IMG/VR virus record: IMGVR_UViG_3300042010_000106
Coordinates: 248,326-312,325 of that record
Direction: 5' to 3' (one strand)
DNA: 64,000 bases
Shown here: in pieces, positions 1,886-33,912 of the stretch
Layout of the letters: each line of letters begins with the position of its first letter
Position numbering within the stretch: position 1 is the stretch's first letter
Notes under the pieces: model-generated
What the model was told of the DNA's origin: nothing
The model's input: only the letters and a program-made list of their open reading frames with translations
Databases searched by the model: none
Position numbers and translations under genes: made by a program

Positions 1886-3054
1886 CAGTCAGCCGCCTGT
1901 GCTTTCTTGACGGTTTTTTCCAGAAGCTTTTTGATCGTCTTCGGCAATTCTTTACCCGTGAAGTGGTATGCGAATGCTTCGGCGAAAAGTTCCTGTACGC
2001 TGGTCTTGGCGTATTCCGAAATCAGCGAATCGGAATGCGAGATTGCCGCGCTGGTCGGCCAGATGGCGCTGAGTGCCTTGCTGTTTTGGTTCAGCAGGAT
2101 ATTCAAATCTTCCGGCGACATTTTGTGGATCTTTTTCAGATACGCGAGCGCATCTTTGAACATTGCCAGTTCGTCTTCTTCGATGTCGCTTTGGAATTCG
2201 CGAACCGATTGCTGCGAAGAAACCAGTGCAGTGCAAAGGTCTTCCATTTCGGATTTCTTTGCCTTGGTCACTTTGGTTTGTTCGTTGTAGATTTCCAGCC
2301 ACTCGGAACGAGTCTTTTCATCAACGAAACGATACCACACAGCGTGGCCGAGTTCGTGCATGAAAATGTATTGGTTGTACAGTTGATCGTTCAGAACTTT
2401 CGGGTGCAGTTTGATGATGTCCTCTGCGCTACCCGATTTGAAACTGACTTGATACGAACCGGCCCACTTGCCTTTTGGATTGTGGACTTCGATGCGCTGA
2501 ATCGGCAGAACTTTCGACAGGCCCATGTCGCCCATCTTGGCTACGACTTTCTTGATCGCTACTTTGATAGCTTTCTTTTCGTCGTCGTCAGTTTTGCGGA
2601 AATAGTGCATAGGGCCGAGGTCGGTTTTGACTTCGCCGTAATGCAGAGTGATTTGCACACCGAATGCTGCGCCCGGTGCAGGATCTTTACCGATGTTTGC
2701 AATCAGTGTGTGTTCGTCGTATTCGAACGTTTGTGGCTCTTCACTGTGCAGCGTGTCTTCGATGTAGCAAGTGTTACGCTTCGGCGAATGGGCCAGTGCC
2801 AATTTGTTTTTCTTGCCTACGCGGACGATGATGTAATCGTCTTTTGCAACTTCGATCAGAACGCGGTCGCTCTTCACTTTGGCAACAGCAGTTTTGCCTT
2901 CGGTGTCGCCGCCGCTAACGTCCACAACTACGTCGCTGCTTTTCTTTTTCTTTTTGGTCGGCACGTCAAGGTCGAGTTTCTTTTTCTTCACCAGCACTTT
3001 ACCGCTCGATTCCTTGTTCTTTTTCTTCTTCTTTTTCTTGATGTCATCAGACAT
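1885..3054 (-). CDS. Zincin-like metallopeptidase with poly-Lys N-terminus
   Basis: HELGH (HExxH) plus distal ELFAEAFA third-ligand motif; GGAG RBS before MSDDIKK. Confidence 0.75.
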   Translation of the reverse strand: MSDDIKKKKKKKNKESSGKVLVKKKKLDLDVPTKKKKKSSDVVVDVSGGDTEGKTAVAKVKSDRVLIEVAKDDYIIVRVGKKNKLALAHSPKRNTCYIEDTLHSEEPQTFEYDEHTLIANIGKDPAPGAAFGVQITLHYGEVKTDLGPMHYFRKTDDDEKKAIKVAIKKVVAKMGDMGLSKVLPIQRIEVHNPKGKWAGSYQVSFKSGSAEDIIKLHPKVLNDQLYNQYIFMHELGHAVWYRFVDEKTRSEWLEIYNEQTKVTKAKKSEMEDLCTALVSSQQSVREFQSDIEEDELAMFKDALAYLKKIHKMSPEDLNILLNQNSKALSAIWPTSAAISHSDSLISEYAKTSVQELFAEAFAYHFTGKELPKTIKKLLEKTVKKAQAAD

Positions 3055-3334
3055 TGGTATTCTCCAAAGGTTTTGTGTAGGGTATGCCTGTTTTGGCATG
3101 AAAGAATTTTGCGTTTGGATCAGGCTTGGTTAGCAATTCGTGGGAGTAGAATGAATCCCCATCACTAATGGGTCGCGATAATATACCGCCTTCAAGTTCT
3201 ATATCCCGCACCTCGATAACAGCGTGTGGATTGTTTTTCCAGTCTGTATTTTTCCAACGAGAGCCTACGATCCAACCGCCTGCAAATTGTACAGGTTCGT
3301 TTTTTGCGTTGTAGGAATTTCGCCACACCTGCAT
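3047..3334 (-). CDS. Hypothetical protein
   Basis: 95 aa ORF; GGAG RBS; in operon. Confidence 0.6.
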   Translation of the reverse strand: MQVWRNSYNAKNEPVQFAGGWIVGSRWKNTDWKNNPHAVIEVRDIELEGGILSRPISDGDSFYSHELLTKPDPNAKFFHAKTGIPYTKPLENTNV

Positions 3335-3354
3335 TAGCTACTCTCCAGAGTTTT

Positions 3355-3858
3355 TCAGTCGCAAATATCTTTGAGGCCGTCGCCAATCGCGCTGACACAT
3401 TCACCGGCTGTTTCGACTGTGCTGTTAATACCGTTGCCGATAGAACGCACAATGCCTTCTGCCAAATTAAGCAGGCCGTAACCATCAACAACTGGCGCAC
3501 TGGACTGCGAAGACGACATAGACAGAGCCGAGTTATTTTGTGGCGCGTTACGCTCACGGTATTCCTTGCGGGATTGCTCAATCGAAATCTTTTCTTGAGC
3601 AACGTACGCGACCGGATCAAAACTTTCGTGACCGACAACAGTTACCAGAAGCTTTTCGGCTTGGTAATGGCACGGACGATCCCACGCAATGTAGCCGCAA
3701 ATTTCGTTGTATTTTTGTTCGTCGATGAATTCCCAATCACCCCAACCCGCTGCCAATTCTTCGGCAGTGAATTCTTCGCGACGACTGCTGTACCAAATAT
3801 TTCTGTCCCACGAACGATAGCGGTACAGGTATTCAACGTCGCTTTGTTTTTCAACCAT
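3355..3858 (-). CDS. Hypothetical protein
   Basis: GAGG RBS before MVEKQ; overlaps the upstream stop. Confidence 0.6.
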   Translation of the reverse strand: MVEKQSDVEYLYRYRSWDRNIWYSSRREEFTAEELAAGWGDWEFIDEQKYNEICGYIAWDRPCHYQAEKLLVTVVGHESFDPVAYVAQEKISIEQSRKEYRERNAPQNNSALSMSSSQSSAPVVDGYGLLNLAEGIVRSIGNGINSTVETAGECVSAIGDGLKDICD

Positions 3859-4483
3859 TTGCCACCTCTTTGGCGGCAAGGGCCGCGATTTCTTTTGTCA
3901 GGAAACCATTCAACAGAATTTCGTTTTCGGTGATGCCCATGTAATCGAACTGGATTCCGTTGTTGAACTGGAACAGACCACCCGGCGTCATTTTCGAATT
4001 GAAATTCTCTACGTCTTTATCCCACGTGTAACCGTTGGTGCCGATGTAGTGAATCATGATCGGGTATTTGCTGCGGTTTTCGGTGTTGGCATTCAGGTTG
4101 CCATAACCGTAGACCAGATAAACGTTTCCGTTTTCATGGGTGTATGTGCTGCCGATGGTTGGCAAGTCATCCATGTAAACGGTTTGATCGCCGACAGTGG
4201 CATAACGCGGGATGAACACCACGTAGTTTTCCAAGTCGTGCGCATAAATGATTTCTGTTTTGTTGGTGCCTTGCGCTTTGATCGCGATTACAGCTTCGTC
4301 GGCTGCTACGCATTCGAACAGAGCGTTGTCGGTTTTGCGTTTCAACCAATGCACGTTCGGACGGCACAGCGCGTATTGCAAAACCCCGTTAGAAACAACC
4401 GGGTTGTAAATATTGTGGATTGCATTGAGAGCCAATGCTTCTTGGATCAAACTGTTTACTTGCTCTTCGGTGTACTTGATCAT
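3851..4483 (-). CDS. Hypothetical protein with DUF1653-like domain
   Basis: YTHENGNVYLV...IHY...GYTW...F pattern; start MIKYT downstream of ACTGTAAA at 4529-4536. Confidence 0.5.
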   Translation of the reverse strand: MIKYTEEQVNSLIQEALALNAIHNIYNPVVSNGVLQYALCRPNVHWLKRKTDNALFECVAADEAVIAIKAQGTNKTEIIYAHDLENYVVFIPRYATVGDQTVYMDDLPTIGSTYTHENGNVYLVYGYGNLNANTENRSKYPIMIHYIGTNGYTWDKDVENFNSKMTPGGLFQFNNGIQFDYMGITENEILLNGFLTKEIAALAAKEVANG

Positions 4484-4529
4484 ACGTTGCCTTTTTATGT
4501 GGATTGGGCACTCGCCCTTTGTCCTCAAT

Positions 4530-5462
4530 TTACAGTTTTTTCGCTTTGGAATAGCCGTCGAGAATATCCGCCAATCCTTTTGCAATTGCGTTATGGCCTT
4601 TATCGCTGTCGTCGTACAGAGTACGCAGCAAACGTGCATCACAATTCAACATTTCAACAGGCTGCTTTTCATAACGCGTCTGGAAAGCCATCAGTTCTAA
4701 GCGTTCGTGTATTTCGTTGAGGCCGTTTCTCTCATAGTAGCGGGCGTCCGGGGTTGTGACGGGGCCGCAAAACAAAAGCATGCGCGCCTCTTTGACGATT
4801 TCTTTTACGGCTTCATTCACTTTTAAGCCACGGTCACGGATAAGCTGATCTTCGATTATGTTGAAGTGTTCACCACGTTTGTCAGCGGTCGCAATGTCGG
4901 GCGTTTTATCCGCACGTACATTCTTCAGGTGCATATTTGCTGCGTGGATAATCTGCTTTGTCTGTTTCTCTACAGCCATGCCGTACGTAAGTGTACGTAA
5001 GTTCTTTTTATCTGTGAGAATTGTCAGGCCAGCGGTAGGATGCTTGCTTGTCCAATCTTTCAGGAAAATAAGCCCCTGCTTTTTCAGAGGTGCCTTTATC
5101 ACAGATTTTTTCCACGTGCGTTCGTACCATTTTGCAGACAGGAAAACGTACTCACGGCCATTCAAAAAAACCGCGTCACCAAACCATGACATGATATAAC
5201 GGCGTTTTTCAATGTAGTCGAGGTTTCGCAGGTCGAAAATGTCCACGATCTTTTTCGCGTGGTCTATCGCACTATTTCGGATGTCTTCGGGCACGCCGAA
5301 CAGCCGATCTTTCGCATTTTTAAATTGCGGGCCACCGTCTGTATATGTGTGCAGTAGCAAAGCTTTGTGAAGCGCTTGCTGGTGGTCTACAAACTTCTCT
5401 TCTAAATCACCGAGCGTAGCGCCGCTAACGACGGTGTTAAAAATGGGCAAATAAACTTTCAT
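4530..5462 (-). CDS. Orphan 310-aa protein directly downstream of the structured non-coding element
   Basis: Long ORF with AGGA RBS; no motif recognised. Confidence 0.75.
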   Translation of the reverse strand: MKVYLPIFNTVVSGATLGDLEEKFVDHQQALHKALLLHTYTDGGPQFKNAKDRLFGVPEDIRNSAIDHAKKIVDIFDLRNLDYIEKRRYIMSWFGDAVFLNGREYVFLSAKWYERTWKKSVIKAPLKKQGLIFLKDWTSKHPTAGLTILTDKKNLRTLTYGMAVEKQTKQIIHAANMHLKNVRADKTPDIATADKRGEHFNIIEDQLIRDRGLKVNEAVKEIVKEARMLLFCGPVTTPDARYYERNGLNEIHERLELMAFQTRYEKQPVEMLNCDARLLRTLYDDSDKGHNAIAKGLADILDGYSKAKKL

Positions 5463-5972
5463 GAATTTCCTAAGTCTTTATCAATGGTTGGTGCGCAGGC
5501 CGGTGGGTCGGCTTTGGGAAAGGGGGCGGGCGGCAGGTGGGGATAGGGCGCCTTTCGGCGCTGTTATCGTTAGGAACGTAGTGACTAGATAACGAGCTGC
5601 CTTTGATCCAGAAAAGACTTATGGTTCGTTTTATGGAACATAAAATTCGGACACAATATGCCATTGAAAAATCACAGAAGGCATGCAAAGCACACGCTCT
5701 TTCAAAGCTTTTCTTGTGGGGCTGCTGGGGGCTGCTCTTGCACTCGCATCTGCTGTCCCTTCGGGACGACAGGCTTGTTCGCTTCGCTCCCTCGCCTGTC
5801 TTTCTTTCGCTTCGCTCCAGCCTTTCTCGCAAGCTCGAAAGAGCAAACGCAATTCGTTCGAAGCTGGTTGAACCGCAAAGGAAGCAATGGCTCACTACGT
5901 TCGGGGTCGTTTCAAAACGCATACGTTCTGAACCTCCATTCCGCGCCGAGTACACATCCCCCAATTTACAGT
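5463..5972. other. Structured non-coding element (candidate replication origin or structured leader/ncRNA)
   Basis: Multiple hairpins, direct repeat TTCGCTTCGCTCC (5778, 5806), inverted repeat GAACGTAGTGA (5574/5892), G-tracts, no convincing CDS. Confidence 0.6.
5965..5972 (-). promoter_or_regulatory. ACTGTAAA motif pointing into the structured element
   Basis: Exact match to the recurrent motif, AT-rich flank. Confidence 0.6.
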
Positions 5973-6167
5973 ATTAAAAAGGTCGATATTTTTGAGCCAA
6001 AAAGAAACGGTTTTACCTAATGAAAGCTTGTGTATTAACGCATTAATAAAAAACATGGGGTCACGGGAGAGCGAAAAACACGTGTATTTTTGCAGCGTAG
6101 ACGCTCAGGATTACAGGTTCGCAAATCATTTGTGTATTTTCCTAATAAAAACCAAATAAAAGGCAAT

Positions 6168-6194
6168 AAAAAAGGGAACCGTTTGGCTCCCTTT
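6168..6194 (-). terminator. Intrinsic terminator
   Basis: GGGAGCC-AAAC-GGTTCCC-TTTTTT on the minus strand after the stop at 6213. Confidence 0.7.
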
Positions 6195-6212
6195 AGGTAA
6201 GGCAATGAAAGA

Positions 6213-6998
6213 TTAGGACTTGCTGGCTGTGAAATACGCACTCAATTCCTGAAGGTTGCTTTCAGGTTTGCGTTTCCATTCACCATGCGAAACCACTTGC
6301 GGTGCCAATGGGCAGGGGTCTTCTTTGTACAAAAGGCGTTTGCAAACCTCATGCAAAAGATTAACCAATTGCCCATCGGTTATATCAAAACTCCAACCGG
6401 TTTGGCCGAAGTCGAATTGCAAAGCCAAGCGCGGTTCCTGATTAACCACTTCAGGTTCAGCAATTGCCTCTGTGACAGCCGGTGCCGGATTGAAGAAATC
6501 ATAAACTGCTTTGTTGATGGATTCACCAACAGGCAGACCATCGTGCGTTTCGAAAACTTCTTTGCCGGGATTCAATTCGGCCACACGTGATTCAATGGTC
6601 TGTTCCGTGTCGTACGTGGCGTCAACCATTTCACGATAACCCGGTGCCTGACCTTTCCACACGTCCACGCCTTCAATGGTCACGCGCAGCTTTTCAGAGC
6701 CGTACATGTCCACGTTGATAACGGTTTCGTCATCGTTCCAATTGAATGTGCGGATAGCTGCCGCTGTAGACTTCAGCTTGTGTTTATTTTTCAAACGCTT
6801 CAGGATTTCGTGTTTCACACCATCCCAAATTTTACCGAACGCAGCAGAATCGCTGTCGTGAATAACCTTCGCCAGCTTTTCGCCAGTCTGGTTACTCATG
6901 AACGGCATAATCATACGCAGCATTGCACTACGTTTTGCATCGCCTTTACGGCCCCGTGCAATTGCGATCATGTTTGACGCAATCAGTTTTTCGTTCAT
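6213..6998 (-). CDS. Hypothetical protein
   Basis: 261 aa; ATGA overlap with the upstream gene. Confidence 0.75.
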   Translation of the reverse strand: MNEKLIASNMIAIARGRKGDAKRSAMLRMIMPFMSNQTGEKLAKVIHDSDSAAFGKIWDGVKHEILKRLKNKHKLKSTAAAIRTFNWNDDETVINVDMYGSEKLRVTIEGVDVWKGQAPGYREMVDATYDTEQTIESRVAELNPGKEVFETHDGLPVGESINKAVYDFFNPAPAVTEAIAEPEVVNQEPRLALQFDFGQTGWSFDITDGQLVNLLHEVCKRLLYKEDPCPLAPQVVSHGEWKRKPESNLQELSAYFTASKS

Positions 6999-7498
6999 GG
7001 TTGGTACTCAAAATCAACAGGTTTTATTTGGTGGCCGTGCGTAACCACAGAGCATTCCAAAGCCGCACGAACATCCGGCACTAGGTCTGCTTTAGACAGG
7101 CTATGCAAAACAATGCGATTGACCGCACGCCCACGAATCAGTCTGGCCGCTCCCTGCACGTTATTCAAAAACAAATGATGCTTGTAGTTTTTAACCATCA
7201 CGACTTTATCCGCCGGGAAAATCTCGACAGTGTACCAGTCGAAAATAGGTACAACCTTTTCAGGCACTTCAGCTACTTTTGAATAACCGTCCTCAAACGC
7301 GGCTGCGGGACTGAACGACTGATAGCCATCCAGATACTGCACGAAATAACCGCCCACAAAAGGCTTATGTTTTTCCATGTAGTCAGCAGTAACGATCACG
7401 TACACGTTGGCATCAGCACTGATCAAGGAATTACCCACGATGCGGTCGATTTGAAAACCGTCCACTTCTTTGTGGCATTTCCAATGTGGCAGTTTCAT
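6995..7498 (-). CDS. Phage protein with GGY..Y.DGY.SFSP...FE.GY domain
   Basis: KPFVGGYFVQYLDGYQSFSPAAAFEDGY; AGGAGG RBS before MKLPH. Confidence 0.7.
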   Translation of the reverse strand: MKLPHWKCHKEVDGFQIDRIVGNSLISADANVYVIVTADYMEKHKPFVGGYFVQYLDGYQSFSPAAAFEDGYSKVAEVPEKVVPIFDWYTVEIFPADKVVMVKNYKHHLFLNNVQGAARLIRGRAVNRIVLHSLSKADLVPDVRAALECSVVTHGHQIKPVDFEYQP

Positions 7499-7499
7499 T

Positions 7500-7979
7500 T
7501 TATTCCTCCTTGAGTTTGTACATGAATTGCAGCGTGCCACCTTCTGGCGAACCGTGCATGATAGAACCGTCGCGGATTTCGAACAGAGACTGCGCGGCGT
7601 TGATACGATCACACATCGACGGGAAATCACCCGGACGCAAATCAATTTTCTGACCTTCTGGCTTGGTCACGAAAATATAAATGCAGCGGTCGGCCATGCC
7701 AATTTTTACACGGTCTTCGTGGCCTACCCACATTGCGAATTCATCGAGGCGCAGAAATTCTTCGCAAATCAGGAAACGCATGGTGGCGCTGCCGACAGAC
7801 AAAGCCACTTCCAAATCCTTTGCCATCCAGCCTTTGAAATCCACGTTGATTTCGCCGATGGTTTGCCCGCGCAGGAAATTCAGATTGTCGTCGTAGCGCA
7901 TGCTGAAAACATTGCCATCGCGTGTAGCAGGTTCGTCACGTTCATGCAAAACAACTTTGATTGGATTGAGGTCGGTCAT
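7500..7979 (-). CDS. Hypothetical protein
   Basis: 159 aa; tightly coupled in operon. Confidence 0.7.
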   Translation of the reverse strand: MTDLNPIKVVLHERDEPATRDGNVFSMRYDDNLNFLRGQTIGEINVDFKGWMAKDLEVALSVGSATMRFLICEEFLRLDEFAMWVGHEDRVKIGMADRCIYIFVTKPEGQKIDLRPGDFPSMCDRINAAQSLFEIRDGSIMHGSPEGGTLQFMYKLKEE

Positions 7980-9058
7980 CGCAGTTTATATCCTTTGGAA
8001 ATGTTGCGGAGAGGTTCGGTTGGTTGCAGAACACGTGTCGAGCAAACCCATTCAAGGCGGCGCTGGTCAGCAGTGATTTTCCGTTCAACGTCACGTACTT
8101 TCATGTACAGGCCGCGATCTGGAATGCAGATGATATCCCCTTCGTTAACGGCGCTCACTTCTGGCCCCAAAACAATTGGAATATCACTCATTGTCATAAG
8201 CCGATCGTAATCGAGTGTGGTGTTTTCCCCACCGATATTGCACAGCAGTTTTTGGATACCCATATCGAATTCAACAGAGACGTGGGTGAACCGCGAACTG
8301 ATTACTTTGACACGAATTGTTTTACCAGCATGACGGCGCAGGTCGGCAATCAGAATTGGCACGCCATCCATACGCAGCAGGCGCTCTTTCAACAATTGCA
8401 AATCGTTGCGAATGCTGTACGTGGCCGATGCAAAGAATTTCGGCACCAGAATATCGAACGCAACAAAACCTTGCGGATGTTCTTTATCCATTGAGTGCGG
8501 CGCACTGGTCGAATCAATGTGATAGCCATCAATTTGCGCAATGTTCAAATGCGTGAACAACCGGCGCTGCTGACCGTACATTGTGTAACCCGGTTGGCGC
8601 AGAGTGCGATAGCAGATACCACAATTCACAGAACCAGTTGCAACGCTGTCTTCGAATTCTTCCGCTTCCAGCACACCGAGAACGCCAGTGTTATCGCGTC
8701 CACCAGAAACGTCGAGGATTACATCGTCGTTCATGATTTTTTCGGCCATATCCAGACCAAAAATATCGTCGTCCTGCATATCCATTTCAATATCGTCAAT
8801 GAAACGATCTTTCTGCGGAATGACCGGCGCCATGTTTGAGTTTTCACCGCGTGGGATATTCGTTTGGAAACACGAACACGGACGGCCAACCAAACGGTTA
8901 ACCTGATACAGCGTTACTTCGACGGCATCAACCGCCAAACTATTTTGAACCTGATTGTTAAAAGCCTCAACCGTTTCCGTTAGGCGCGCTTGAGCTTGCT
9001 TGGGGATTACGTTGCGGGCGTGACGACGTGCATGTTTAGCTAGGCCCTTCTTGATCAT
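7976..9058 (-). CDS. Putative virion (head completion-like) protein with CxC...CxxC motif
   Basis: 360 aa; PCSC...NCGIC; preceded by TAATTT motif and GGAGG; function is inference. Confidence 0.45.
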   Translation of the reverse strand: MIKKGLAKHARRHARNVIPKQAQARLTETVEAFNNQVQNSLAVDAVEVTLYQVNRLVGRPCSCFQTNIPRGENSNMAPVIPQKDRFIDDIEMDMQDDDIFGLDMAEKIMNDDVILDVSGGRDNTGVLGVLEAEEFEDSVATGSVNCGICYRTLRQPGYTMYGQQRRLFTHLNIAQIDGYHIDSTSAPHSMDKEHPQGFVAFDILVPKFFASATYSIRNDLQLLKERLLRMDGVPILIADLRRHAGKTIRVKVISSRFTHVSVEFDMGIQKLLCNIGGENTTLDYDRLMTMSDIPIVLGPEVSAVNEGDIICIPDRGLYMKVRDVERKITADQRRLEWVCSTRVLQPTEPLRNISKGYKLR

Positions 9059-9079
9059 TGGTTGGCCCTCCTTTACGTT

Positions 9080-9118
9080 AAATTACGCCGCGAAAAACGA
9101 AAGTGTGGATAGTAATTC
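9080..9118. promoter_or_regulatory. Divergent TAATT(T/C) promoter motifs
   Basis: TAATTT on minus (9080-9085) and TAATTC on plus (9113-9118) between divergent genes. Confidence 0.45.
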
Positions 9119-9143
9119 AGTGGTATGACAAGGAGATTCGCCA

Positions 9144-9791
9144 ATGGCCCGCAAGAAGAGCAAGAAGAAAGAAAAGCCCCAAGCGCCTATACTGGAATTC
9201 AAACGCAAGACGTTGAAACGCACGCATAAAGATTCGATCTATGTTACCGGCCAAGACATGGGCACAGCGAACTATGCTGTAACCCAAATCGAAGCATGGT
9301 TACGCGACGGCAAACTGCGTTTCCGAATCGTTGGCACCAAAATGATGGTGAACATGATTCACGACGTAAAGGTCGCGCAGAATGAATGCGCATTGTTTGT
9401 AAAAGAATACAGCGCTTTGCCTCCTGCTGACCATATCGCAGCCGAGCGCTACCAATCGCGGCCCGGTGGCAGCACTGGTTCCACCGTTGAAGCCATTTCC
9501 ATGATGCTTGGCGTTATGTGTATGGTTTGCCCTGATACACCAATCGAATTCTACACAGCGGCCACGTGGAAGAACGCATTCAACCGTACCGCCGCTGATT
9601 TGAAAGAAATGTATGAGGACTTAAAGGTCAAATACAAAGGCACCGGAATCGTCATTCACCAATTGGATAGTTTCTTTATCGCGTTGTATCACGCCGCTAA
9701 AATATTGGGCGTGCAACCATTTGATTTCATTCAATCAATGGCCGATGAAGAGCGTTTGTTTTTGGTTCTGCAAGATGCACCGTCCCTATAA
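9144..9791 (+). CDS. RuvC-like Holliday junction resolvase
   Basis: GQDMGTANYA, AERYQ and HQLDSFFIA: RNase H-fold D/E/D pattern. Confidence 0.7.
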   Translation: MARKKSKKKEKPQAPILEFKRKTLKRTHKDSIYVTGQDMGTANYAVTQIEAWLRDGKLRFRIVGTKMMVNMIHDVKVAQNECALFVKEYSALPPADHIAAERYQSRPGGSTGSTVEAISMMLGVMCMVCPDTPIEFYTAATWKNAFNRTAADLKEMYEDLKVKYKGTGIVIHQLDSFFIALYHAAKILGVQPFDFIQSMADEERLFLVLQDAPSL

Positions 9792-9843
9792 AAAATGTAA
9801 ATAAACCGGGTATTTGACAGTTTCGAAAACCCGGAGAATCACC

Positions 9844-10287
9844 ATGGACAAGCATAGCAACGACGGTATCATTTCCGCCTCTGTTGGGCCACGAAATCAC
9901 CCGCATCGTTTGAGCCGCGCAGCCGTTTCGCTGAACGGATCTTTCTCGCAATACATCGCAAATGAAATCCTTTACGCTGCATTCGATTTGGATGCACGCG
10001 CAATGGATGAAAAGCAGAACCCATATCTGCTGACGATTGGTTTCCTTGAAACGGCGGTGAACATTGCCGAAGTAAATGCAATGGCCCAGCGCGATTACGT
10101 GCCGGAACACATTACGTTCACCACGCGCAATCAGGAAAACCGAATCGTTTCTATTCGGACGTTCACCAATCTGAAGTTCCGGTCGTCTGCTGTCGGTTAT
10201 GCCGTGCATGCAAAAGACGAACGCCCGGTTCACAAGATTGTTTACACCGCCACGCTGTCTGATGCTCAATACTTTACATCGGAATGA
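9844..10287 (+). CDS. Hypothetical protein
   Basis: GGAG RBS; variant AATGTAAA motif at 9794. Confidence 0.65.
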   Translation: MDKHSNDGIISASVGPRNHPHRLSRAAVSLNGSFSQYIANEILYAAFDLDARAMDEKQNPYLLTIGFLETAVNIAEVNAMAQRDYVPEHITFTTRNQENRIVSIRTFTNLKFRSSAVGYAVHAKDERPVHKIVYTATLSDAQYFTSE

Positions 10288-10766: not shown

Positions 10767-10784
10767 ACACCCCGGAGAAACACA

Positions 10785-11462: not shown

Positions 11463-11469
11463 TTGAAGC

Positions 11470-11514
11470 AAAAAAAAAAGGCCGCAATCCCGAAAAGGAA
11501 AGCGGCCTTTTTTT
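11470..11514. terminator. Bidirectional intrinsic terminator
   Basis: A10-GGCCGC...GCGGCC-T7 between convergent genes. Confidence 0.85.
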
Positions 11515-11524
11515 CGTCTGTACT

Positions 11525-12822: not shown

Positions 12823-12862
12823 AACAAATGCCTCAAAAATACCAATTTACCTATAAGACGTA

Positions 12863-21631: not shown

Positions 21632-21641
21632 GGACACAGAA

Positions 21642-26366: not shown

Positions 26367-27776
26367 ATGGCTAAGACTGTTGTTGTTCGTAAGGACACCA
26401 GCGCTGCTGCTAAGAAGGCTGCTAAAGTAGCCAAGCAAGCGCGCAACAAAAACAAAGGTAAGCTGAACGCAAAAGCTAAACGCGAATACAAGCACCTTTC
26501 CCCGAAACAGAAAAAAGCGCATCTGGAAAAAGTGGTTTGGCGTAAAGCCAAGGCCCACGGCGCCACTGATGCCGAAGCCGATAAGGCCGTACTGATTTAC
26601 AAAAAACGTCGTCAACATCGGAATGCTGGTAAGCACGCCGCTGAACAACGCCGTCAAGCTACCAGTCTGCAAAAGCAGGTTCGTGGCAACATCAAAATGA
26701 AAGCGAAGAAAATCTCTGACTCTCACAAGAAAGCACTGCAAAAGATTCGCACCGCCAAAGTTGCACCGGCTGTGAAATCGAAAATGCGCAATGCTGAAAA
26801 GCAACGTTACGCCGCCGAACGCACTCAACTGGCGAAAGAGCGTAACAAAGCTGTGAAGTCGCACGCATCGCGTCTGACCAAGATCAAAGCAGTTGCACAG
26901 AAGCACGGCCCAATCAAGCTTTCGAGCCTGATTTCCAACTTCAGCAAACGCACTCTCGGCCAGAAAGGCAAGCGTCTGAAAACCGTAAGCGATAAGCCGA
27001 AAGTTGCTCAGACCAAAGCCGGTGGCGCAATGAAGAAACCAACCGCCGCGAAAAAGCCACGTGCCGCGAAATCGGTTGGTAGCGAAGTTGCTGCAATTGC
27101 CGACAAAGCATTCGGTGTGAAAGGGAAGCCGGGCCGCAAGCCTAAAAACCCTACCCCAGCCGCTGATGCTCCAGTAGCCAAAACCAAACGCGCTTACGTG
27201 CGTAAGGCAAAAACTGCTGAAACCGCCGCCAAAGCTGCACCGGCTGCAAAAGCCACCAAGGGTAAGAAAAACCCTACCACCAAAGTAGCCACTCCAGCTA
27301 CCGAGGGTAAGCCAAAACGCGCTTACAACAAGAAGCCAAAAGTTGAAGCTGCCGAGGCTCCAAAAGCCAAACGTGCCTACAACAAAAAGCCGAAAGTTGA
27401 AGCTGCTCCGGCTGAAGTGAAAACCAAGCGTAAATATACGCGTAAGGCCAAGCCTGAAGCTGCCCCGGCTGCTGAAGTGAAAACCAAACGCAAATATACC
27501 CGTAAGGACAAGGCCGCTGCTCCTGCTGCCGAAGCCCCAAAGGCAAAACGCGCTTACAACAAAAAGCCAAAAGCTGATGCCGCTCCGGCTGCAAAAGCTC
27601 CGGCCAAAACCGGTAAGAAAGCTGCTGCTAAACCAGCCGCTAAAGCACCAGCCAAAACCGCTGCGAAAGCTCCGGCAAAAGGCGGCGCTAAAGCCAAATC
27701 CGGCGCGGCAATCCCGCAAAAGAAAACCGCAGCTAAACCAGCCAAGTCTGGTAACAAGCGCGCTACCCTGAACTAA
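26367..27776 (+). CDS. Histone H1-like Lys/Ala/Pro-rich DNA-binding protein
   Basis: 469 aa, extremely basic; repeats KRAYNKKPK x3, KRKYTRK x2, KPGRKPK, PAKK/AAK-type tail. Confidence 0.8.
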   Translation: MAKTVVVRKDTSAAAKKAAKVAKQARNKNKGKLNAKAKREYKHLSPKQKKAHLEKVVWRKAKAHGATDAEADKAVLIYKKRRQHRNAGKHAAEQRRQATSLQKQVRGNIKMKAKKISDSHKKALQKIRTAKVAPAVKSKMRNAEKQRYAAERTQLAKERNKAVKSHASRLTKIKAVAQKHGPIKLSSLISNFSKRTLGQKGKRLKTVSDKPKVAQTKAGGAMKKPTAAKKPRAAKSVGSEVAAIADKAFGVKGKPGRKPKNPTPAADAPVAKTKRAYVRKAKTAETAAKAAPAAKATKGKKNPTTKVATPATEGKPKRAYNKKPKVEAAEAPKAKRAYNKKPKVEAAPAEVKTKRKYTRKAKPEAAPAAEVKTKRKYTRKDKAAAPAAEAPKAKRAYNKKPKADAAPAAKAPAKTGKKAAAKPAAKAPAKTAAKAPAKGGAKAKSGAAIPQKKTAAKPAKSGNKRATLN

Positions 27777-27876: not shown

Positions 27877-28887
27877 TTGGGTGTTCCCGCATTGCAAATA
27901 CAATCAAAATACATTGATGACAATCCAAATGTCATTGATTTAAAGAATGCCCGAAACGCTAATGAAGTGATTACAGTTCTTTCGAAGATCAACACAACAT
28001 TTAGCGTATTGGTTGCCAAATTCAATCAAAAGAAGCTTCCATATTTGAAAGTTTCTGACGCCGTAGAAGCATTGAAATTCTGTGTTGATTCAATGGTAGA
28101 GATTCGTTGCGCCCGTTCGGTTGCGCAGGAGTTCAGCGATTCAAAACGCGACCGTTGTTTCAATATGATTGCAGCACAGTTAACGAACATTCGGGACTTT
28201 CAAAAGACGCTGCTGGATTTGATCGACAGCGTATGCGCAACCCGTATGGATAAACACCTTTCGTTCTTGTCTGAAACCGTATTCAAGATCCTTTCCAAAA
28301 TCAGCAACACAACGCAGCTTCACGTACGCTTGCCAGATCAACAAATGATTTGCATTCGAACCGATAGCGGTGTGACTGACAAAGACGGATACGTAAGCGG
28401 GCCAATCACAATCAAGCTGATGCTGGTTGGCGGCAATTATCGGATATCAATTCCTGATTCCCCATTCGTTGCATCTGAGGAATCCAACGTCTTCAATTCG
28501 AAAGACGTTCAATCGTATATCATGGGGAATTTGTCAGACTTCGCGCACGTTGGAAAGCCTGTGCCAAAGGATGATCAATTGCTCGCATCGAACATGGTTC
28601 AAAGCGTTGACGTTACCGAGGAAGCATTGGTCGTTACGCTCAAACCTTCTGTGCGTCCCGATGATATCCAACGCTTGTTAACGCAGGTGCTTCCGTACCT
28701 GAAACGAGCTGTGAATTTGTCGGGCACGGATATCATTCACCGTGTCTCGCAATACGGCCCGAATCGCACAATCTCGTTTATTGTGGCAAAGCGTAAAGTG
28801 TATGATGCAAGGTCATTGACCAAGCTGACTAAATTGCTCGGCGCGTCGAAAACCGAAGTCGAAAAACTCAACTCAATTATGGAATGA
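27877..28887 (+). CDS. Hypothetical protein (late operon)
   Basis: 336 aa; TTG start uncertain; follows TAATTT motif. Confidence 0.7.
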   Translation: MGVPALQIQSKYIDDNPNVIDLKNARNANEVITVLSKINTTFSVLVAKFNQKKLPYLKVSDAVEALKFCVDSMVEIRCARSVAQEFSDSKRDRCFNMIAAQLTNIRDFQKTLLDLIDSVCATRMDKHLSFLSETVFKILSKISNTTQLHVRLPDQQMICIRTDSGVTDKDGYVSGPITIKLMLVGGNYRISIPDSPFVASEESNVFNSKDVQSYIMGNLSDFAHVGKPVPKDDQLLASNMVQSVDVTEEALVVTLKPSVRPDDIQRLLTQVLPYLKRAVNLSGTDIIHRVSQYGPNRTISFIVAKRKVYDARSLTKLTKLLGASKTEVEKLNSIME

Positions 28888-30041
28888 CCATGAAAATACC
28901 AAAGCCCTCGACATACGCCAAGATGGAGAAAATGTCGGACGCACAATTGACAGCGTATTTTGAAAAACGCCTGCCACTGTACCGCCGTGCACTTGCTCGC
29001 TTGACATCGTTTCTGCGTCAAATGGTCGGTCGTGTGTTCAAAGGTAAAAACCTTGCAACTGCGTCTGATGTAATCCTGAACATTTCCGGTGGCGAAGGTG
29101 GCAAAACTTCCCATTCGGATTCGGGCACCAGCCTGACCGTTAGCAAGTTCGATCACCCCGGCCCGCGTAAGCTCGCTGGCTACATTGATGCACTGGAACA
29201 AATCGAATACATCGGCGAACTGGATTACCAGATTACCCGGTACGCTGACACTGAAAACAAATCGCTGCAAAAGGTTCAAAAACTTCGCGTGAGCATGTAC
29301 AACAGTTTGGTTGACGCTTACGTTGAAGCAATTGAAGCAATGCGCGACATCGCCAAAAACAAACTGCCTGAACCAGTGGGCAATCTGTTCAAAGCAGCCA
29401 AGAAATACTTCGATCCAAAAGAAGTAGAATTCATTGAGAATTACAAGGCTGCAAACGACGGCGACGAACCGGAACACATGCTGGATTATTACATCAACGT
29501 CGGCGTGAAAGACAACGTTGTTGACATCGTTTTCAACGCAGACATTTCGCACTGGCCGCGTGAAACGAAAGAAGGTTTGATGGTCGCGGTAATCACCGTG
29601 CGCCTTGAACCAACTGAAGACGCGTTCACCATGAAAGCTTATGCGAACGTTCTGGATCGCGTGGGCCTGCCGGGTCGCTACAACATCGGCACCGAATTGA
29701 AAGGGAAAGACATTCCCGAAATCGCGAAGAAAATTCCGAAAGCTTTCGACATGGAATTGGCCGCGCACAACATCATTTCGTTCATGGCTCCAGTTAACCT
29801 GAAGCTGGACGAAACCGAAGTTGAAGAACGTCTGATGAAAATCGAAGGCGTTAGCGGTGTTGTTGTAAATGACGACGGCGTGATGATTGAAATGACCGAT
29901 GATCGTGGTGTGCACCGTGAAGCAATGGCCGCGCTCGACACAATCCCATCGGTTAAAAAGCTGATTCGTTCGGGTTATTCTCGCACGCTGGCAAACCCTT
30001 CGCCGGGTAGCTACCTGTACAGCGTAACTCTGAAGAGCTGA
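28884..30041 (+). CDS. Putative virion protein
   Basis: 385 aa; strong codon bias; ATAS and DVILNISGG motifs; virion role inferred. Confidence 0.55.
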   Translation: MTMKIPKPSTYAKMEKMSDAQLTAYFEKRLPLYRRALARLTSFLRQMVGRVFKGKNLATASDVILNISGGEGGKTSHSDSGTSLTVSKFDHPGPRKLAGYIDALEQIEYIGELDYQITRYADTENKSLQKVQKLRVSMYNSLVDAYVEAIEAMRDIAKNKLPEPVGNLFKAAKKYFDPKEVEFIENYKAANDGDEPEHMLDYYINVGVKDNVVDIVFNADISHWPRETKEGLMVAVITVRLEPTEDAFTMKAYANVLDRVGLPGRYNIGTELKGKDIPEIAKKIPKAFDMELAAHNIISFMAPVNLKLDETEVEERLMKIEGVSGVVVNDDGVMIEMTDDRGVHREAMAALDTIPSVKKLIRSGYSRTLANPSPGSYLYSVTLKS

Positions 30042-30937
30042 TGTATACGCATATCGGCATGCCGTTTGATTTTCGTCTTTCGGCATGGCCTTACGGCGGC
30101 GATAGGTACGTCACGACGTACAACACTGACCGTTATCAAATCGACATTCGTGCGATTTGCGATTACGTCGAAGAACAACTGCGCAAATCTCCTTTAGCAT
30201 TCGTGCTGAAAACGACGTTCACGCTTGTGAATCTTTATTCAGGATTCACCGATACAAGCGTGGGCCTCGTTATGGAGCCTGCAAAGAAAGTTCGACGCGA
30301 TCAAGTTGTGTTCACATTCACCCGGACAAACGTAGACGAATCGGGCGATCCGATGTTTATGCACTGGCTGAACAATTACACAATTCAGTGGGGAACAAAT
30401 ACGAGTCGCAGTTCTGATTACATTTCAATTGCCGTTCCAATCACTGTAGCGACACGTGCCCGCCTTCAGCAAATGACGGACAGGGAACAGAAAGCGCTAT
30501 ACGACATTGTGGGCGGCTATTCGAAAGCTGTGATTCGTTCGATCCACGAATACGACGGTTCGGTTTTATCCACGCGGAATTTCCTACGCTACACAATCCC
30601 ACGCGCCATGTTCTATATGGCGATTAGCGATTGGCAGTACGTGTTGGACTTCTGGAAACGCATGCCGGATTTGATACACGTTAACTGGACTCCGAAATTC
30701 ATCGAATATTACGTTCGATACATTGCGCCTAAGCTGCCTGACCGCAAACGCAGCAAGTATTACGCGCAGTACGAAGAGGAAGTGCAGGAACACTTACGGC
30801 AATTCGTTCTCCGGTATCTGCAAAACACCGTGCAAAAAGAAGAAGTTAATCTGGTTGCACTTTTACCCGCAGATGACGCAATGATTCACGACGTTGAAAC
30901 GTTGGTGTTTAATCTGTCGAAGGGGATAATCGCATGA
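30041..30937 (+). CDS. Hypothetical protein
   Basis: 298 aa, in operon. Confidence 0.75.
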   Translation: MYTHIGMPFDFRLSAWPYGGDRYVTTYNTDRYQIDIRAICDYVEEQLRKSPLAFVLKTTFTLVNLYSGFTDTSVGLVMEPAKKVRRDQVVFTFTRTNVDESGDPMFMHWLNNYTIQWGTNTSRSSDYISIAVPITVATRARLQQMTDREQKALYDIVGGYSKAVIRSIHEYDGSVLSTRNFLRYTIPRAMFYMAISDWQYVLDFWKRMPDLIHVNWTPKFIEYYVRYIAPKLPDRKRSKYYAQYEEEVQEHLRQFVLRYLQNTVQKEEVNLVALLPADDAMIHDVETLVFNLSKGIIA

Positions 30938-32148
30938 CGAATGTTTATGAAGGGCAGACGGCTACGATTTCCGAGGAATTTCTTGATGATTTCGATCAAG
31001 TTATTTTGCCTCGCGAATCTACGCCTGCCCCGTTGGTGCGATTATTCGACACTGACAAAACAATCATCGCTGAAGTCTACGCAAAGCCAGATCCAAAGAT
31101 TGCGGGAACGTGGGTTGCTGATATCCCAATCCCGAACATGGATTTGCGCGACACTACGAAGTTTGTAGCGAAGTGGAGTTTCGAAAGCGACGAAGGTGTA
31201 CACACTGCAAAAACAACGATAATGGTAGAGCCTGCAACAATGGGGCGCGAATCCGACATTGTGATTTTGTGTGGACACGACAGCCGTATGCAGGTGACGA
31301 TTCCAACGAAAGTAAAGTTGGGTGTTGCTGAAAGAAAAGCAGACCTTGCCCGCGCAGTTAAGGCACGGCCTGCAAAGGAAGGCGACTCGCTTTCAATGTC
31401 GCTTTACTACAACAACAAAGCCGTATTCGAAGCACTCGACAGTACAAACACTGCCGTGAAAATCGAAACGTCTGAAAACAAAACATTAATCGACATGCCT
31501 GCTGTTGTTGGTAAACCAGCAATGGCACCAATGTCGTTGATCGTTAAGCACAAACCAACACGGAAAATTGCAGAAACTTCCTACACCTACAAAGTGTGGG
31601 CGGTTACTCCGCAAATCCTGTTGGCTGCGCGACAACTTGAAGATTTCATCGACAAGGCGCGCATTGCGAATATCATTCCTGAGTTGGAATATACACAGGG
31701 TGATTTGCTGGAATTCTTGACGCGGGGCCTGATGTATTTCAACGCTTTGCAACCGGTAATGACAGCGTTTACAGGAACCAATATGCAAGGGCCTTTGATG
31801 AACTGTTGGTTGGTTTGTTCCAGCCAATACGCATTAGGGGCACAAGCACAGGCAGAAGGCGCATTAGCTTTTGATTTCGGTGGTCAAACCGTTAGCCTGA
31901 ACATCGACCGCACCCCTGCAATTGAAGCGGCATTAGGTCGCATTGATGCAGAGATTGAAGGGATGGTTAAACCATACAAAAAACTGCTTGGTAAAACAGG
32001 CGTTCTGGATGGTGACGGTTCACAAGGCGGCAAATTCATTGACGGTTCCAGTCACATGGGCGTTCTTGGTTTGTCGAATACTCCATTGACACGAATTGGC
32101 CGTGGCCGAAGTGGCATGAGTTCCAGTTTCTACCGATCTTTCTTCTAA
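30934..32148 (+). CDS. Putative neck/head-tail adaptor protein
   Basis: C-terminal helical region with FDFGGQTVSLNIDR, reminiscent of neck proteins; inference. Confidence 0.4.
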   Translation: MTNVYEGQTATISEEFLDDFDQVILPRESTPAPLVRLFDTDKTIIAEVYAKPDPKIAGTWVADIPIPNMDLRDTTKFVAKWSFESDEGVHTAKTTIMVEPATMGRESDIVILCGHDSRMQVTIPTKVKLGVAERKADLARAVKARPAKEGDSLSMSLYYNNKAVFEALDSTNTAVKIETSENKTLIDMPAVVGKPAMAPMSLIVKHKPTRKIAETSYTYKVWAVTPQILLAARQLEDFIDKARIANIIPELEYTQGDLLEFLTRGLMYFNALQPVMTAFTGTNMQGPLMNCWLVCSSQYALGAQAQAEGALAFDFGGQTVSLNIDRTPAIEAALGRIDAEIEGMVKPYKKLLGKTGVLDGDGSQGGKFIDGSSHMGVLGLSNTPLTRIGRGRSGMSSSFYRSFF

Positions 32149-33046: not shown

Positions 33047-33068
33047 GAAAAAATAGCTGCACACAATC

Positions 33069-33088
33069 GGGGGCCTTTGCCCCCTTTT
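33069..33088 (+). terminator. Intrinsic terminator
   Basis: GGGGGC-CTTT-GCCCCC-TTTT. Confidence 0.75.
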
Positions 33089-33111
33089 GTCGATTTATGG
33101 TCGGGGGAAAT

Positions 33112-33912
33112 ATGGCGAAGAAATCAAAGGACGTTGTTTTTGACGTTAGTGGGGGCAGCACAAAGATTGACGAACGTGGAAAGCTGCGCAACCGTGACGC
33201 AGACGAAGCCGACCGTGGATCAATGGGCAGTAAAGGCAAGAAGAAAAAGAAAAGCAAGATTGAAAAGCGTGAAGCAATTGTAATCGAAGATAACACGTAC
33301 AAAGCTGGACAAGAAAAGAAGAAAAAGAAACGCAAAACTTCCGACTCTACAGAAGTCATTCTACCGAAGAAAAAGAAACGTTTGCCTGTCACCATTGAAG
33401 GTGAAAAAAGCCTCGTTGTACTGAAGGCAACGAAAGGCGACCAGAAGAAACTCGCGAAGGCTCAAGCAGCCATCGAAGAATTTAACGAATTGCCACCTCC
33501 TGTTGATGAATTCGACGCGGTGATTCGTGCCAAGTTTGAAGCGCAAGTAGACCTTGCCGCTCGGCTTGAAGAACAAATGGAAGACCGTATTTATGCACGG
33601 GATGTTTACGCATTGAACACCGTGTATAACCAGATTCGGGAAATGATTGCAGACCTGCGCGCAAGCCGTGACGTGAGCGCACAAGTTGATGAAATTCAAA
33701 CGGTAGTTATTCTGCCGTATCACCGCGTTGTCGGTGAAGCACTTGGTTTGATTTTCTTCCACGTAGAAGGCTCCATTCGCAAATTCGTAAAGGATGGGGA
33801 TTTGCAGGAAGAGATTATCAAGAAGCTGAAGAACTCGATTCACGAAAGTGCTGTGCAATTGCAGGGTGAATACAACGCCGCGACTGATCGCGTACGGAAA
33901 GTATTGCTATGA
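33112..33912 (+). CDS. Protein with poly-Lys N-terminus and helical C-terminus (possible terminase small subunit)
   Basis: Helical oligomerisation-like core next to an HNH gene; function is inference. Confidence 0.35.
   Translation: MAKKSKDVVFDVSGGSTKIDERGKLRNRDADEADRGSMGSKGKKKKKSKIEKREAIVIEDNTYKAGQEKKKKKRKTSDSTEVILPKKKKRLPVTIEGEKSLVVLKATKGDQKKLAKAQAAIEEFNELPPPVDEFDAVIRAKFEAQVDLAARLEEQMEDRIYARDVYALNTVYNQIREMIADLRASRDVSAQVDEIQTVVILPYHRVVGEALGLIFFHVEGSIRKFVKDGDLQEEIIKKLKNSIHESAVQLQGEYNAATDRVRKVLL

What the first reader, a model, noticed from the sequence alone, without database searches (positions are those of the whole stretch)
2908..33156. A shared 9-residue tag D-V-[VI]-[VLF]-[DN]-[VI]-S-G-G in four unrelated proteins: candidate addressing or processing system
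Seen in sequence: DVVVDVSGG in the metallopeptidase (2908-2934, -), DVILDVSGG in the 360-aa Cys protein (8699-8725, -), DVILNISGG in the 385-aa protein (29067-29093) and DVVFDVSGG near the N-terminus of the 266-aa protein (33130-33156). Five of nine positions are invariant, the codons differ so conservation is at protein level, and the proteins are otherwise dissimilar. The motif always sits in an apparently disordered, charged segment in the N-terminal third. Inference: a short linear motif of a hydrophobic beta strand ending in Gly-Gly. It could be a beta-augmentation docking signal (e.g. for capsid/portal loading), or a cleavage/conjugation site analogous to ubiquitin-like GG ends. One carrier is an HExxH protease, so a protease-plus-substrates set is possible. 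I know of no description of this tag.
Basis: partly seen in the sequence, partly recalled or inferred. Interest (0 to 1): 0.82.

Follow-up and report, generated by a model that had tools for sequence, protein, structure and literature searches.

The report
Shared address tag in jumbo-phage proteins
A nine-residue peptide ending in Val-Ser-Gly-Gly sits in floppy segments of at least five unrelated proteins of a Lu11-like jumbo phage and changes in step across those proteins from phage to phage, so it is almost certainly a common docking or addressing signal, though its receptor is not yet known.

Summary
The four 9-mers are exactly where reported and are the only matches in six frames. The window is the last 64 kb of a 312-kb IMG/VR jumbo-phage contig related to Pseudomonas phages Lu11, HRDY3 and PaBG.

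The tag is kept at the same position in orthologues of all four carriers, down to about 30-40% identity. It forms an island of conservation inside indel-rich segments that AlphaFold2 predicts as disordered. The clade-wide core is hydrophobic-[D/x]-V-[S/R]-G(-G).

A fifth family (phrog_17701) carries the tag 1-6 residues from its C-terminus. A sixth carrier, Lu11 gp189, has it in an internal linker. So the tag is position-independent.

Each phage lineage has its own flavour, shared by its non-homologous carriers (permutation p about 2e-5), while synonymous codons differ. That points to one co-evolving binding partner.

Best reading (inferred): an addressing peptide that loads a small set of proteins into the assembling head or portal region. 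This is supported only indirectly, by neighbouring genes whose PaBG orthologues are virion proteins and by weak neck-protein and minor-capsid fold resemblances.

Cleavage at Gly-Gly, docking to a non-virion hub, and tag-to-tag zippering remain open. I found no published description.

The parts
2908..2934 (-). Tag DVVVDVSGG in the N-terminal disordered, poly-Lys region of the metallopeptidase
   Evidence: a tag is identifiable by eye in about 38 of 46 homologues (36 of 46 by the regex count), always between two poly-K runs and 12-25 residues before the conserved LPV[ED]KDDYIIV start of the catalytic domain. AF2 pLDDT is below 50 for residues 1-77.
1885..3099 (-). Carrier 1: gluzincin-type HExxH metallopeptidase (phrog_17197); likely true start at 3054
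   Evidence: weak Pfam ATLF/Peptidase_Mx matches; Atlas look-alikes ATLF, M90 and Phage_min_cap2; Foldseek weak hits to collagenase M9 and M1 aminopeptidases.
8699..8725 (-). Tag DVILDVSGG in the inter-domain linker of the 360-aa Cys protein
   Evidence: in 90 homologues D is 83%, V 87%, S 74% and G 82%, flanked by gap-rich, low-information columns. AF2 pLDDT is below 50 for nearly all of residues 80-131 (segments 80-99, 101-104 and 109-131).
7976..9058 (-). Carrier 2: 360-aa protein (phrog_21298) with an N-terminal helix plus Cys pairs and a C-terminal beta-rich domain
   Evidence: BFVD Foldseek finds family members in other jumbo phages, then many weak hits to neck, head-tail adaptor and stopper proteins.
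29067..29093 (+). Tag DVILNISGG after the conserved ATAS in the 385-aa protein
28884..30041 (+). Carrier 3: 385-aa protein of unknown function, found only in the Lu11/HRDY3/PaBG clade
33130..33156 (+). Tag DVVFDVSGG at residues 7-15 of the 266-aa reading (12-20 of the 271-aa ORF)
   Evidence: the N-terminal [IVLF]DVSG is kept in representatives down to about 30% identity.
33097..33912 (+). Carrier 4: Lys-rich protein with a helical C-terminal domain (phrog_23026)
26367..27776 (+). Context, not a carrier: histone-H1-like K/A-rich protein, syntenic with PaBG virion protein gp191
   Evidence: the computed MW of 35,272.5 Da matches the published band.
35327..41341 (+). Context, not a carrier: 2004-aa SNF2-domain protein, orthologue of the 221-kDa PaBG virion protein
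30934..32148 (+). Context: protein of phrog_17327, annotated 'head-tail connector', lying between carriers 3 and 4
   Evidence: No Pfam or PDB sequence match, so the annotation is unverified.

Best explanation
The tag is a short linear docking motif: a five-to-seven-residue beta-prone strand closed by Gly. The window's version is D-V-[VI]-hydrophobic-[DN]-[VI]-S-G-G; the clade-wide core is hydrophobic-x-V-[S/R]-G. It is displayed in disordered, often Lys-rich segments at the N-terminus, in linkers or at the C-terminus. It addresses a small fixed set of otherwise unrelated phage proteins (four in the window, six in Lu11) to one common receptor that co-evolves with it. That much follows from the sequence data. 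The next step is inferred: the receptor is most likely part of the assembling head (portal, connector, scaffold or maturation protease). The tagged proteins would then be loaded into the virion and delivered with the DNA, like T4 internal proteins or encapsulin cargo, and the tag-bearing end might be trimmed afterwards in the N-terminal cases.
For: Shown:
- The tag keeps its position in four families across four phages and in large homologue sets.
- It is an island of conservation in gap-rich columns and lies in AF2-disordered segments of two carriers.
- It is position-independent: a fifth family has it at the C-terminal end and Lu11 gp189 has it in an internal linker.
- Non-homologous carriers of one genome share that lineage's flavour. 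Examples are VRVSTVRGG twice in one genome, TINISG twice in another, and a [KQR]VSGG flavour in three or four carriers of another lineage (the fourth has D at that position in one of its two genomes). Same-genome identity is 52 against 30.6 in permutations, p about 2e-5. The tags differ at synonymous sites.
- The census is small and discrete: six carriers stand clear of the next hit in 270 kb of Lu11, with about one hit at that score expected from shuffles, and four carriers in the window.

Indirect support for a virion role:
- Two carriers lie in a gene block whose flanking members are PaBG virion proteins, gp191 and the 221-kDa gp202 (PMC7412058 Table 1).
- That block holds a 'head-tail connector' PHROG.
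- Lu11 gp189 lies between the terminase and the portal.
- The 360-aa model gives many weak matches to neck, adaptor and stopper proteins.
- The peptidase resembles peptidase modules of minor capsid protein 2 families.
- Packaged SNF2 and metallopeptidase effectors are an established phage theme (PMC5512222).
Against: - No carrier is among the 14 PaBG virion bands.
- The PaBG virion proteins I checked (histone-like protein, giant SNF2 protein, MCP) lack the canonical tag, so the tag cannot be the general loading signal.
- Carrier genes sit among replication and recombination genes.
- The fold resemblances are all below significance.
- No receptor was identified.
- AF2 monomer models cannot test binding.
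Confidence: 0.45

Rival explanations
1. The tag is a protease recognition and cleavage site. In the manner of (M/I/L)-X-G-G|X sites of adenovirus, ASFV and poxvirus maturation proteases or of double-glycine leaders, it would be cut by the HK97-like head maturation protease, by an unrecognised Cys protease, or by the tagged gluzincin itself.
For: The window's tags end in hydrophobic-x-G-G with hydrophobic residues at -4 and -7. In the peptidase and the 271-aa families the tag lies in a short N-terminal segment that could be a propeptide. PaBG virion proteins are proteolytically processed. One carrier is a metallopeptidase. Basic clusters precede many tags, as in substrates of lethal-factor-like enzymes; that comparison is from my own knowledge, and the sequences are.
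Against: The second Gly is G in only about 40% of distinct instances, and the residue before the invariant Gly swaps between Ser and Arg, which is unusual for P1/P2 positions. In the phrog_17701 family, cleavage would remove only 1-6 residues. In the 360- and 385-aa families it would separate two conserved domains. The MCP, which is known to be processed, has no tag. AF2 did not place the peptidase's tag in its cleft. No Cys protease is annotated in Lu11 or PaBG, though I did not search for one exhaustively.
Confidence: 0.2
2. The tag docks its carriers onto a hub that is not part of the virion. Candidates are a replication or recombination factory component, a phage or host chaperone or AAA+ unfoldase, or another host factor.
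For: The position-independent placement in disordered tails and linkers is typical of hub-binding motifs. Carrier genes are interleaved with SbcCD, clamp loader, resolvase, primase, helicase and polymerase genes. phrog_17701 is annotated as a DNA enzyme. Lys-rich flanks suggest DNA proximity.
Against: The DNA polymerase, the canonical clamp client, has no tag, and neither does any other gene of Lu11 or the window, ligase and other replisome genes included. The tag does not resemble QL[SD]LF-type clamp motifs. UvsX and TopoII tag-like sequences in PaBG are not conserved in relatives. A conserved host hub would not by itself explain the fast lineage-specific drift.
Confidence: 0.2
3. The tags bind each other. 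This would be a homotypic beta-zipper that co-assembles the carriers into one complex or condensate, in the manner of RHIM-type motifs, so that no separate receptor exists.
For: Concerted, lineage-specific change of all tags in a genome is what mutual recognition predicts. The motif is beta-branched, ends in Gly and lies in disordered segments.
Against: Nine residues with charged Asp or Arg inside the strand are short for a stable zipper. Two flavours coexist within Lu11 and HRDY3: xDVSG in the peptidase and 360-aa proteins, xVRGG in the others. The RHIM core [IV]Q[IV]G is not matched.
Confidence: 0.08
4. The motif is chance, a compositional artefact, or a nucleotide-level element read as protein.
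For: The regex was defined post hoc from four sites.
Against: About 1e-5 to 1e-4 matches are expected by my own estimate from residue frequencies, and four are observed. The tag is conserved at orthologous positions in independent genomes. Synonymous differences are seen.
Confidence: 0.01

Closest known systems
T4 capsid targeting sequence (CTS) of internal proteins IPI-III and Alt, and the propeptides of phiKZ/SPN3US ejection proteins
   Same: A short peptide shared by unrelated phage proteins that would address them to the prohead. In two carriers here it lies in a short N-terminal segment followed by conserved [IV]-x-E or V-E sites.
   Different: The CTS is strictly N-terminal and is removed at (L/I)-x-E by a gp21-type protease (my own knowledge; PMC5694885 is cited for context only, I did not read it). 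Here the tag also occurs at the C-terminus and in inter-domain linkers. Its sequence is unrelated, the protease looks HK97-like to me and has no Pfam match, and packaging is not shown.
Encapsulin cargo-loading peptides
   Same: A roughly 10-residue peptide with alternating hydrophobic residues plus Gly/Ser, at the end of a flexible linker. It is portable between unrelated cargo proteins and binds the inside of an HK97-fold shell.
   Different: The consensus differs: encapsulins have a G-S-L type core (my own knowledge). The host here is a tailed jumbo phage with an ordinary MCP, and binding to the MCP is untested.
Gly-Gly processing signals: ubiquitin/SUMO tails, adenain (M/I/L)XGG-X, ASFV pS273R GG-X, double-glycine bacteriocin leaders (C39)
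   Same: Hydrophobic-x-G-G at the end of a strand, with hydrophobic residues at -4 and -7, and 1-5 residues after GG in the C-terminal family.
   Different: The second Gly is not conserved across the clade. There is no beta-grasp domain upstream. No clan-CE or C39 protease was recognised. Cleavage has not been demonstrated.
MuF/minor-capsid-protein-linked effectors and polyvalent proteins of phages (Iyer et al. 2017, PMC5512222; Jamet et al. 2017, PMC5576092)
   Same: Metallopeptidase, SNF2 helicase and DNA-binding modules that are packaged in the head and delivered with the DNA. The giant SNF2 protein is a PaBG virion protein.
   Different: In those systems delivery relies on fusion to a MuF or portal domain within one polypeptide. 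Here separate proteins share a nine-residue tag.
RHIM and other amyloid-signalling motifs
   Same: A short beta-strand plus Gly core in disordered regions of unrelated proteins.
   Different: The core sequence is different, the tag is much shorter and carries charged residues, and no assembly data exist.

Membership tests
T4-type capsid targeting sequence | Located at the extreme N-terminus of the precursor | tested here: not met
   N-terminal only in the 271-aa family. It is at residues 41-64 in the peptidase, internal in the 360- and 385-aa proteins and C-terminal in phrog_17701.
T4-type capsid targeting sequence | Immediately followed by a prohead-protease site and removed on maturation | tested here: inconclusive
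   [IV]DE follows 6-8 residues after the tag in most 271-aa proteins, but the Glu is lost in HRDY3-like genomes. LPV[ED] precedes the peptidase domain. No cleavage data exist.
T4-type capsid targeting sequence | Carriers are present inside the virion | not testable with these tools
   The PaBG gel-band proteome lists only 14 abundant proteins, none of them a carrier.
Encapsulin cargo-loading peptide | Short conserved peptide at the end of a disordered extension, shared by unrelated cargo | tested here: met
Encapsulin cargo-loading peptide | Binds the interior of an HK97-fold shell protein | not testable with these tools
   Only monomer prediction was available.
Gly-Gly protease site (adenain, Ulp, C39 type) | Invariant G-G (or G-A/G-S) at P2-P1 | tested here: not met
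   The first Gly is essentially invariant. The next residue is G in 29 of 72 distinct instances and otherwise D, E, S, N or R.
Gly-Gly protease site (adenain, Ulp, C39 type) | A cognate papain-like or clan-CE Cys protease is encoded | not tested
   None is annotated in Lu11 or PaBG. The hypothetical proteins were not scanned one by one.
Ubiquitin-like modifier | Beta-grasp domain ending in the GG tail | tested here: not met
   The residues before the tag are disordered or poly-Lys. In the 271-aa family only 6-10 residues precede the tag.
Sliding-clamp binding motif | QL[SD]LF / QLxLxL-type consensus, also present on the replicative polymerase | tested here: not met
   The sequence is different, and no tag occurs in the 1032-aa DNA polymerase or its Lu11 and PaBG orthologues.
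RHIM-type amyloid motif | [IV]-Q-[IV]-G core within a roughly 18-residue conserved segment | tested here: not met
   The core is hydrophobic-D-V-S-G and conservation spans only 5-9 residues.

The most novel reading that the evidence does not exclude
A tailed jumbo phage uses a portable, position-independent nine-residue loading peptide to pack a defined set of enzymes and DNA-binding proteins into its head for co-injection. The set includes a gluzincin protease, a Zn-ribbon protein, a Lys-rich protein and a nuclease- or topoisomerase-like protein. The peptide and its receptor would co-evolve so fast that each lineage has a private code. This would be functionally analogous to encapsulin cargo peptides but operate in an infectious virion.
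Probability: 0.3. Interest if true: 0.8.

Novelty: new variant of a known kind. Interest (0 to 1): 0.62.

Why it matters
If the tag is a loading or docking code, it defines, from sequence alone, which proteins of this poorly studied jumbo-phage clade (Lu11, PaBG, HRDY3 and many metagenomic relatives) act together. It gives a nine-residue handle to find their common receptor. A portable peptide that works at either terminus or in a linker would be a practical tool for loading foreign proteins into phage particles, or for pulling down the assembly or delivery machinery. The concerted drift of the tag across carriers is also a clean natural example of motif-receptor co-evolution that can be tested with swap experiments between lineages.

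Tried and rejected
1. Near-identical DNA search in the phage collection found no match. Relatives were reached by protein search.
2. The exact regex does not occur in the fetched 50-kb syntenic segments of Lu11, HRDY3 and PaBG. That looked like non-conservation until alignments showed lineage-specific versions at the same positions.
3. The head maturation protease of this genome carries DGSITVSGG in its N-terminal region. In 31 relatives this segment does not follow the local tag flavour, so I do not count it as a carrier.
4. PaBG UvsX (DVEIDVSTA) and TopoII (DVQIEVSNK) have tag-like sequences in Lys-rich N-terminal tails. These are not conserved in close relatives or in Lu11, so I rejected them as carriers.
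5. The histone-like virion protein has its own different N-terminal motif.
6. The MCP, the gp081-like protein and the ATPase next to the MCP have no tag, either in L061, which by Lu11 gene order should hold them for this genome, or in Lu11 and PaBG.
7. I tested whether the peptidase binds its own tag. AF2 leaves residues 1-77 disordered.
8. Fold and profile identification of carriers gave nothing significant: PDB sequence searches were empty and Foldseek against PDB was not significant. Atlas gave leads only.
9. The 336-aa neighbour is not a detectable paralogue of the 385-aa carrier.
10. Literature searches for a description of the tag, and for virion proteomes of the clade beyond PaBG, found nothing.
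I reran it with the window protein alone.
Full report
WHAT IS THERE. The carriers are:
- a 404-aa ORF encoding an HExxH peptidase (1885-3099, minus strand; phrog_17197; probably starting at Met16);
- a 360-aa Cys-containing protein (7976-9058, minus strand; phrog_21298);
- a 385-aa protein with no family (28884-30041);
- a Lys-rich 271/266-aa protein (33097-33912; phrog_23026).

BLASTP among them finds only the tag and lysine-rich low complexity. The four 27-nt sites share 15-22 of 27 bases and differ at synonymous positions.

WHERE THE WINDOW COMES FROM. There is no near-identical phage record. Protein searches place the window in the jumbo-phage group of Pseudomonas phages Lu11, HRDY3 and PaBG, with more distant Erwinia and Dickeya relatives. 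The window is the last 64 kb (248,326-312,325) of IMG/VR contig 3300042010_000106, which is 312,325 bp long.

CONSERVATION. At first sight the regex is absent from the relatives. Alignments show that every orthologue keeps a related peptide at the same position. In the order 360-aa, 385-aa, 271-aa and peptidase families:
- Lu11 has VKPIDVSG, VSVIEVRGG, VKPISVRGG and DQSIDVSG.
- HRDY3 has VQVRDVSG, VKVREVRDG, VKVRTVRGG and DYGRDVSG.
- PaBG has DTIIDVTG, DVQISVDG, DRRIDVSG and, upstream of the annotated peptidase start, DVKIDVTV.

Among 91 database homologues of the 360-aa protein, the D-V-S-G core carries 2.9-3.5 bits per position (D 83%, V 87%, S 74%, G 82%). It lies between gap-rich columns of about 1 bit. 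A [DNESTKQR][VI][STR]G core lies in the expected region in 71 of 91 (360-aa family), 36 of 46 (peptidase), 11 of 12 (phrog_17701) and 11 of 23 (271-aa family at E<1e-10). Chance would give 1-6%.

AlphaFold2 with these alignments gives confident domains (mean pLDDT 80 and 82). It leaves nearly all of residues 80-131 of the 360-aa protein and residues 1-77 of the peptidase below pLDDT 50, and the tags lie in these segments.

MORE CARRIERS, AND POSITION INDEPENDENCE. A position-specific matrix built from 16 instances, and later from about 100, was run over the genomes.
- It picked out a fifth family, phrog_17701, annotated 'DNA topoisomerase'. Atlas gives only faint restriction-endonuclease-like leads for it. 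In PaBG gp113, Lu11 gp183 and 10 of 11 further homologues the tag ends 1-6 residues before the stop codon.
- It also picked out Lu11 gp189, a KTSC/KMPT-N protein encoded between the terminase and the portal, with VQVMDVSGA in a Pro/Lys-rich linker.
- In 270 of the 280 kb of Lu11, six carriers score 15.6-25.4 and the next hit scores 14.3; shuffled ORFs give about one hit at 15 or above.
- In the window plus 14 kb beyond it, the four carriers stand alone, apart from a weak hit in the maturation protease.

The client set is therefore small and discrete. The tag works from the N-terminus, from linkers or from the C-terminus.

CONCERTED EVOLUTION. Scans of IMG/VR gave about 20 further genomes. Within a genome, non-homologous carriers share that lineage's version of the tag.
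- In one genome both the 385-aa and the 271-aa proteins read VRVSTVRGG, the 360-aa protein reads VRVSDVSGM, and a phrog_17701 homologue with the same ending exists.
- In another genome both read TINISG.
- In one lineage the usual Asp at -3 is replaced by Lys, Gln or Arg in the peptidase, 360-aa and 271-aa carriers (DTIVKVSGG, DVVV[KQ]VSGG, DSI[RH]RVSGG). The 385-aa carrier does the same in one of its two genomes (DFIGRVSGG) but reads DVIADVSGR in the other. The phrog_17701 member reads DVIVRVRGG.
- PaBG-like genomes have DYKIDVTEG, DSKFDVSGD and DFKIDVSGE.

Over nine lineages the 385-aa and 271-aa tags of the same genome share 52 identities, against 30.6 when genomes are permuted (p about 2e-5). 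Using only the seven variable positions the figures are 37 against 17.2 (p about 4e-5). Related lineages share flavours, which makes this test conservative. Identical peptide tags in one genome still differ at 3-9 of 27 nucleotides, all synonymous, so this is selection on the peptide and not recent gene conversion alone.

I take this as strong evidence that all tags of a genome are read by one partner that drifts with them, or by each other.

WHAT THE PARTNER MIGHT BE. This part is inference.

For a virion role:
- In PaBG, the histone-like protein encoded three genes upstream of the 385-aa carrier's orthologue, and the 221-kDa SNF2 protein encoded four genes downstream of the 271-aa carrier's orthologue, are virion proteins. 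The computed masses of 35,272.5 and 221,159 Da match the published 35,272.92 and 221,161.95 Da (PMC7412058 Table 1).
- The block also holds a protein of a PHROG named 'head-tail connector'.
- Lu11 gp189 sits between the terminase and the portal.
- After its own family, the 360-aa model gives a long run of sub-threshold BFVD matches (E 3e-3 to 0.2) that includes many neck, adaptor and stopper proteins.
- The peptidase is a gluzincin whose look-alikes include peptidase modules attached to minor capsid protein 2 families.
- Packaged metallopeptidase and SNF2 effectors are an established theme (PMC5512222).

Against a virion role:
- No carrier is among the 14 abundant PaBG virion bands.
- The virion proteins I checked (histone-like, SNF2, MCP) lack the canonical tag.
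- The carriers sit among replication genes.

A clamp-type replisome hub is unlikely because the DNA polymerase has no tag.

It fits the clade poorly:
- the second Gly is G in only 29 of 72 distinct instances;
- Ser and Arg alternate before the invariant Gly;
- the C-terminal family would lose only 1-6 residues;
- the processed MCP has no tag.

The maturation protease (phrog_18299) lies 3.4 kb beyond the window end. It has no Pfam or PDB sequence match. That it is HK97-like is my own reading of its motifs.

KNOWN COUNTERPARTS AND NOVELTY. Functionally the nearest things are the T4 capsid targeting sequence and encapsulin cargo-loading peptides. The tag fails the defining positional feature of the former and the consensus of the latter. 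It also fails the defining features of ubiquitin-like tails, clamp-binding motifs and RHIMs (see the membership table). Six literature searches found no description of this tag and no deeper virion proteome for the clade. I rate it a new variant of a known kind, namely shared addressing peptides of phage proteins. The observation itself is solid.

Noticed in passing
window 8756-8773 (-): The 360-aa family has a conserved DDDIFG 10 residues upstream of the tag (F 91%, G 100% of 90 homologues). It resembles the acidic DDDIPF tip of bacterial SSB but is internal. It may be a second docking motif.
   Followed up: partly
window 2959-2976 (-): The disordered N-terminus of the peptidase holds a second conserved mini-motif, [GS]LDLxP, between two poly-Lys runs. 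A conserved LPV[ED] lies just before the catalytic domain and could be a maturation cleavage site. The likely start codon is Met16 (3052-3054).
   Followed up: partly
window 26367-27776 (+): A K/A-rich, histone-H1-like protein of 469 aa is syntenic with PaBG gp191 (O152_gp295), a virion protein seen in several gel bands. It has its own conserved N-terminal motif, K-x-V-x-[KV]-D-N-S-P-E-A type, which differs from the tag.
   Followed up: partly
window 35327-41341 (+): A 2004-aa protein with an SNF2-related helicase core (Pfam, residues 906-1441) is the orthologue of the 221-kDa protein found in PaBG virions. This is a packaged giant helicase, reminiscent of polyvalent proteins.
   Followed up: partly
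L061:3400-4188 (contig positions 3400-4188, 3.4 kb past the window end): The head maturation protease of this genome (phrog_18299, with a C-terminal Cys cluster) has DGSITVSGG in its N-terminal region. The equivalent segment in 30 relatives does not follow the local tag flavour.
   Followed up: yes
L001:17477-18340 (Lu11 gp106): Lu11 has an extra, short MCP-like paralogue inserted in the carrier gene block. It shares the DPITRYDLVL.G..GTL segment with the true MCP and is absent from the window, HRDY3 and PaBG.
   Followed up: no
L005:32799-32825 and L003:522-548 (PaBG): PaBG UvsX and TopoII carry Lys-rich N-terminal tails with the tag-like DVEIDVSTA and DVQIEVSNK. Relatives keep the Lys-rich tails but not these strings.
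   Followed up: yes
window 33909-34238 (+): An HNH endonuclease gene overlaps the stop codon of the 271-aa carrier gene. It is conserved at this place in Lu11, HRDY3 and PaBG.
   Followed up: no
window 1885-14729 versus 14818-45527: Compared with Lu11, the segment holding the peptidase, the 360-aa protein, the resolvase, the primase and the Cas4-like gene appears to be inverted or relocated relative to the clamp-loader-to-polymerase block.
   Followed up: no
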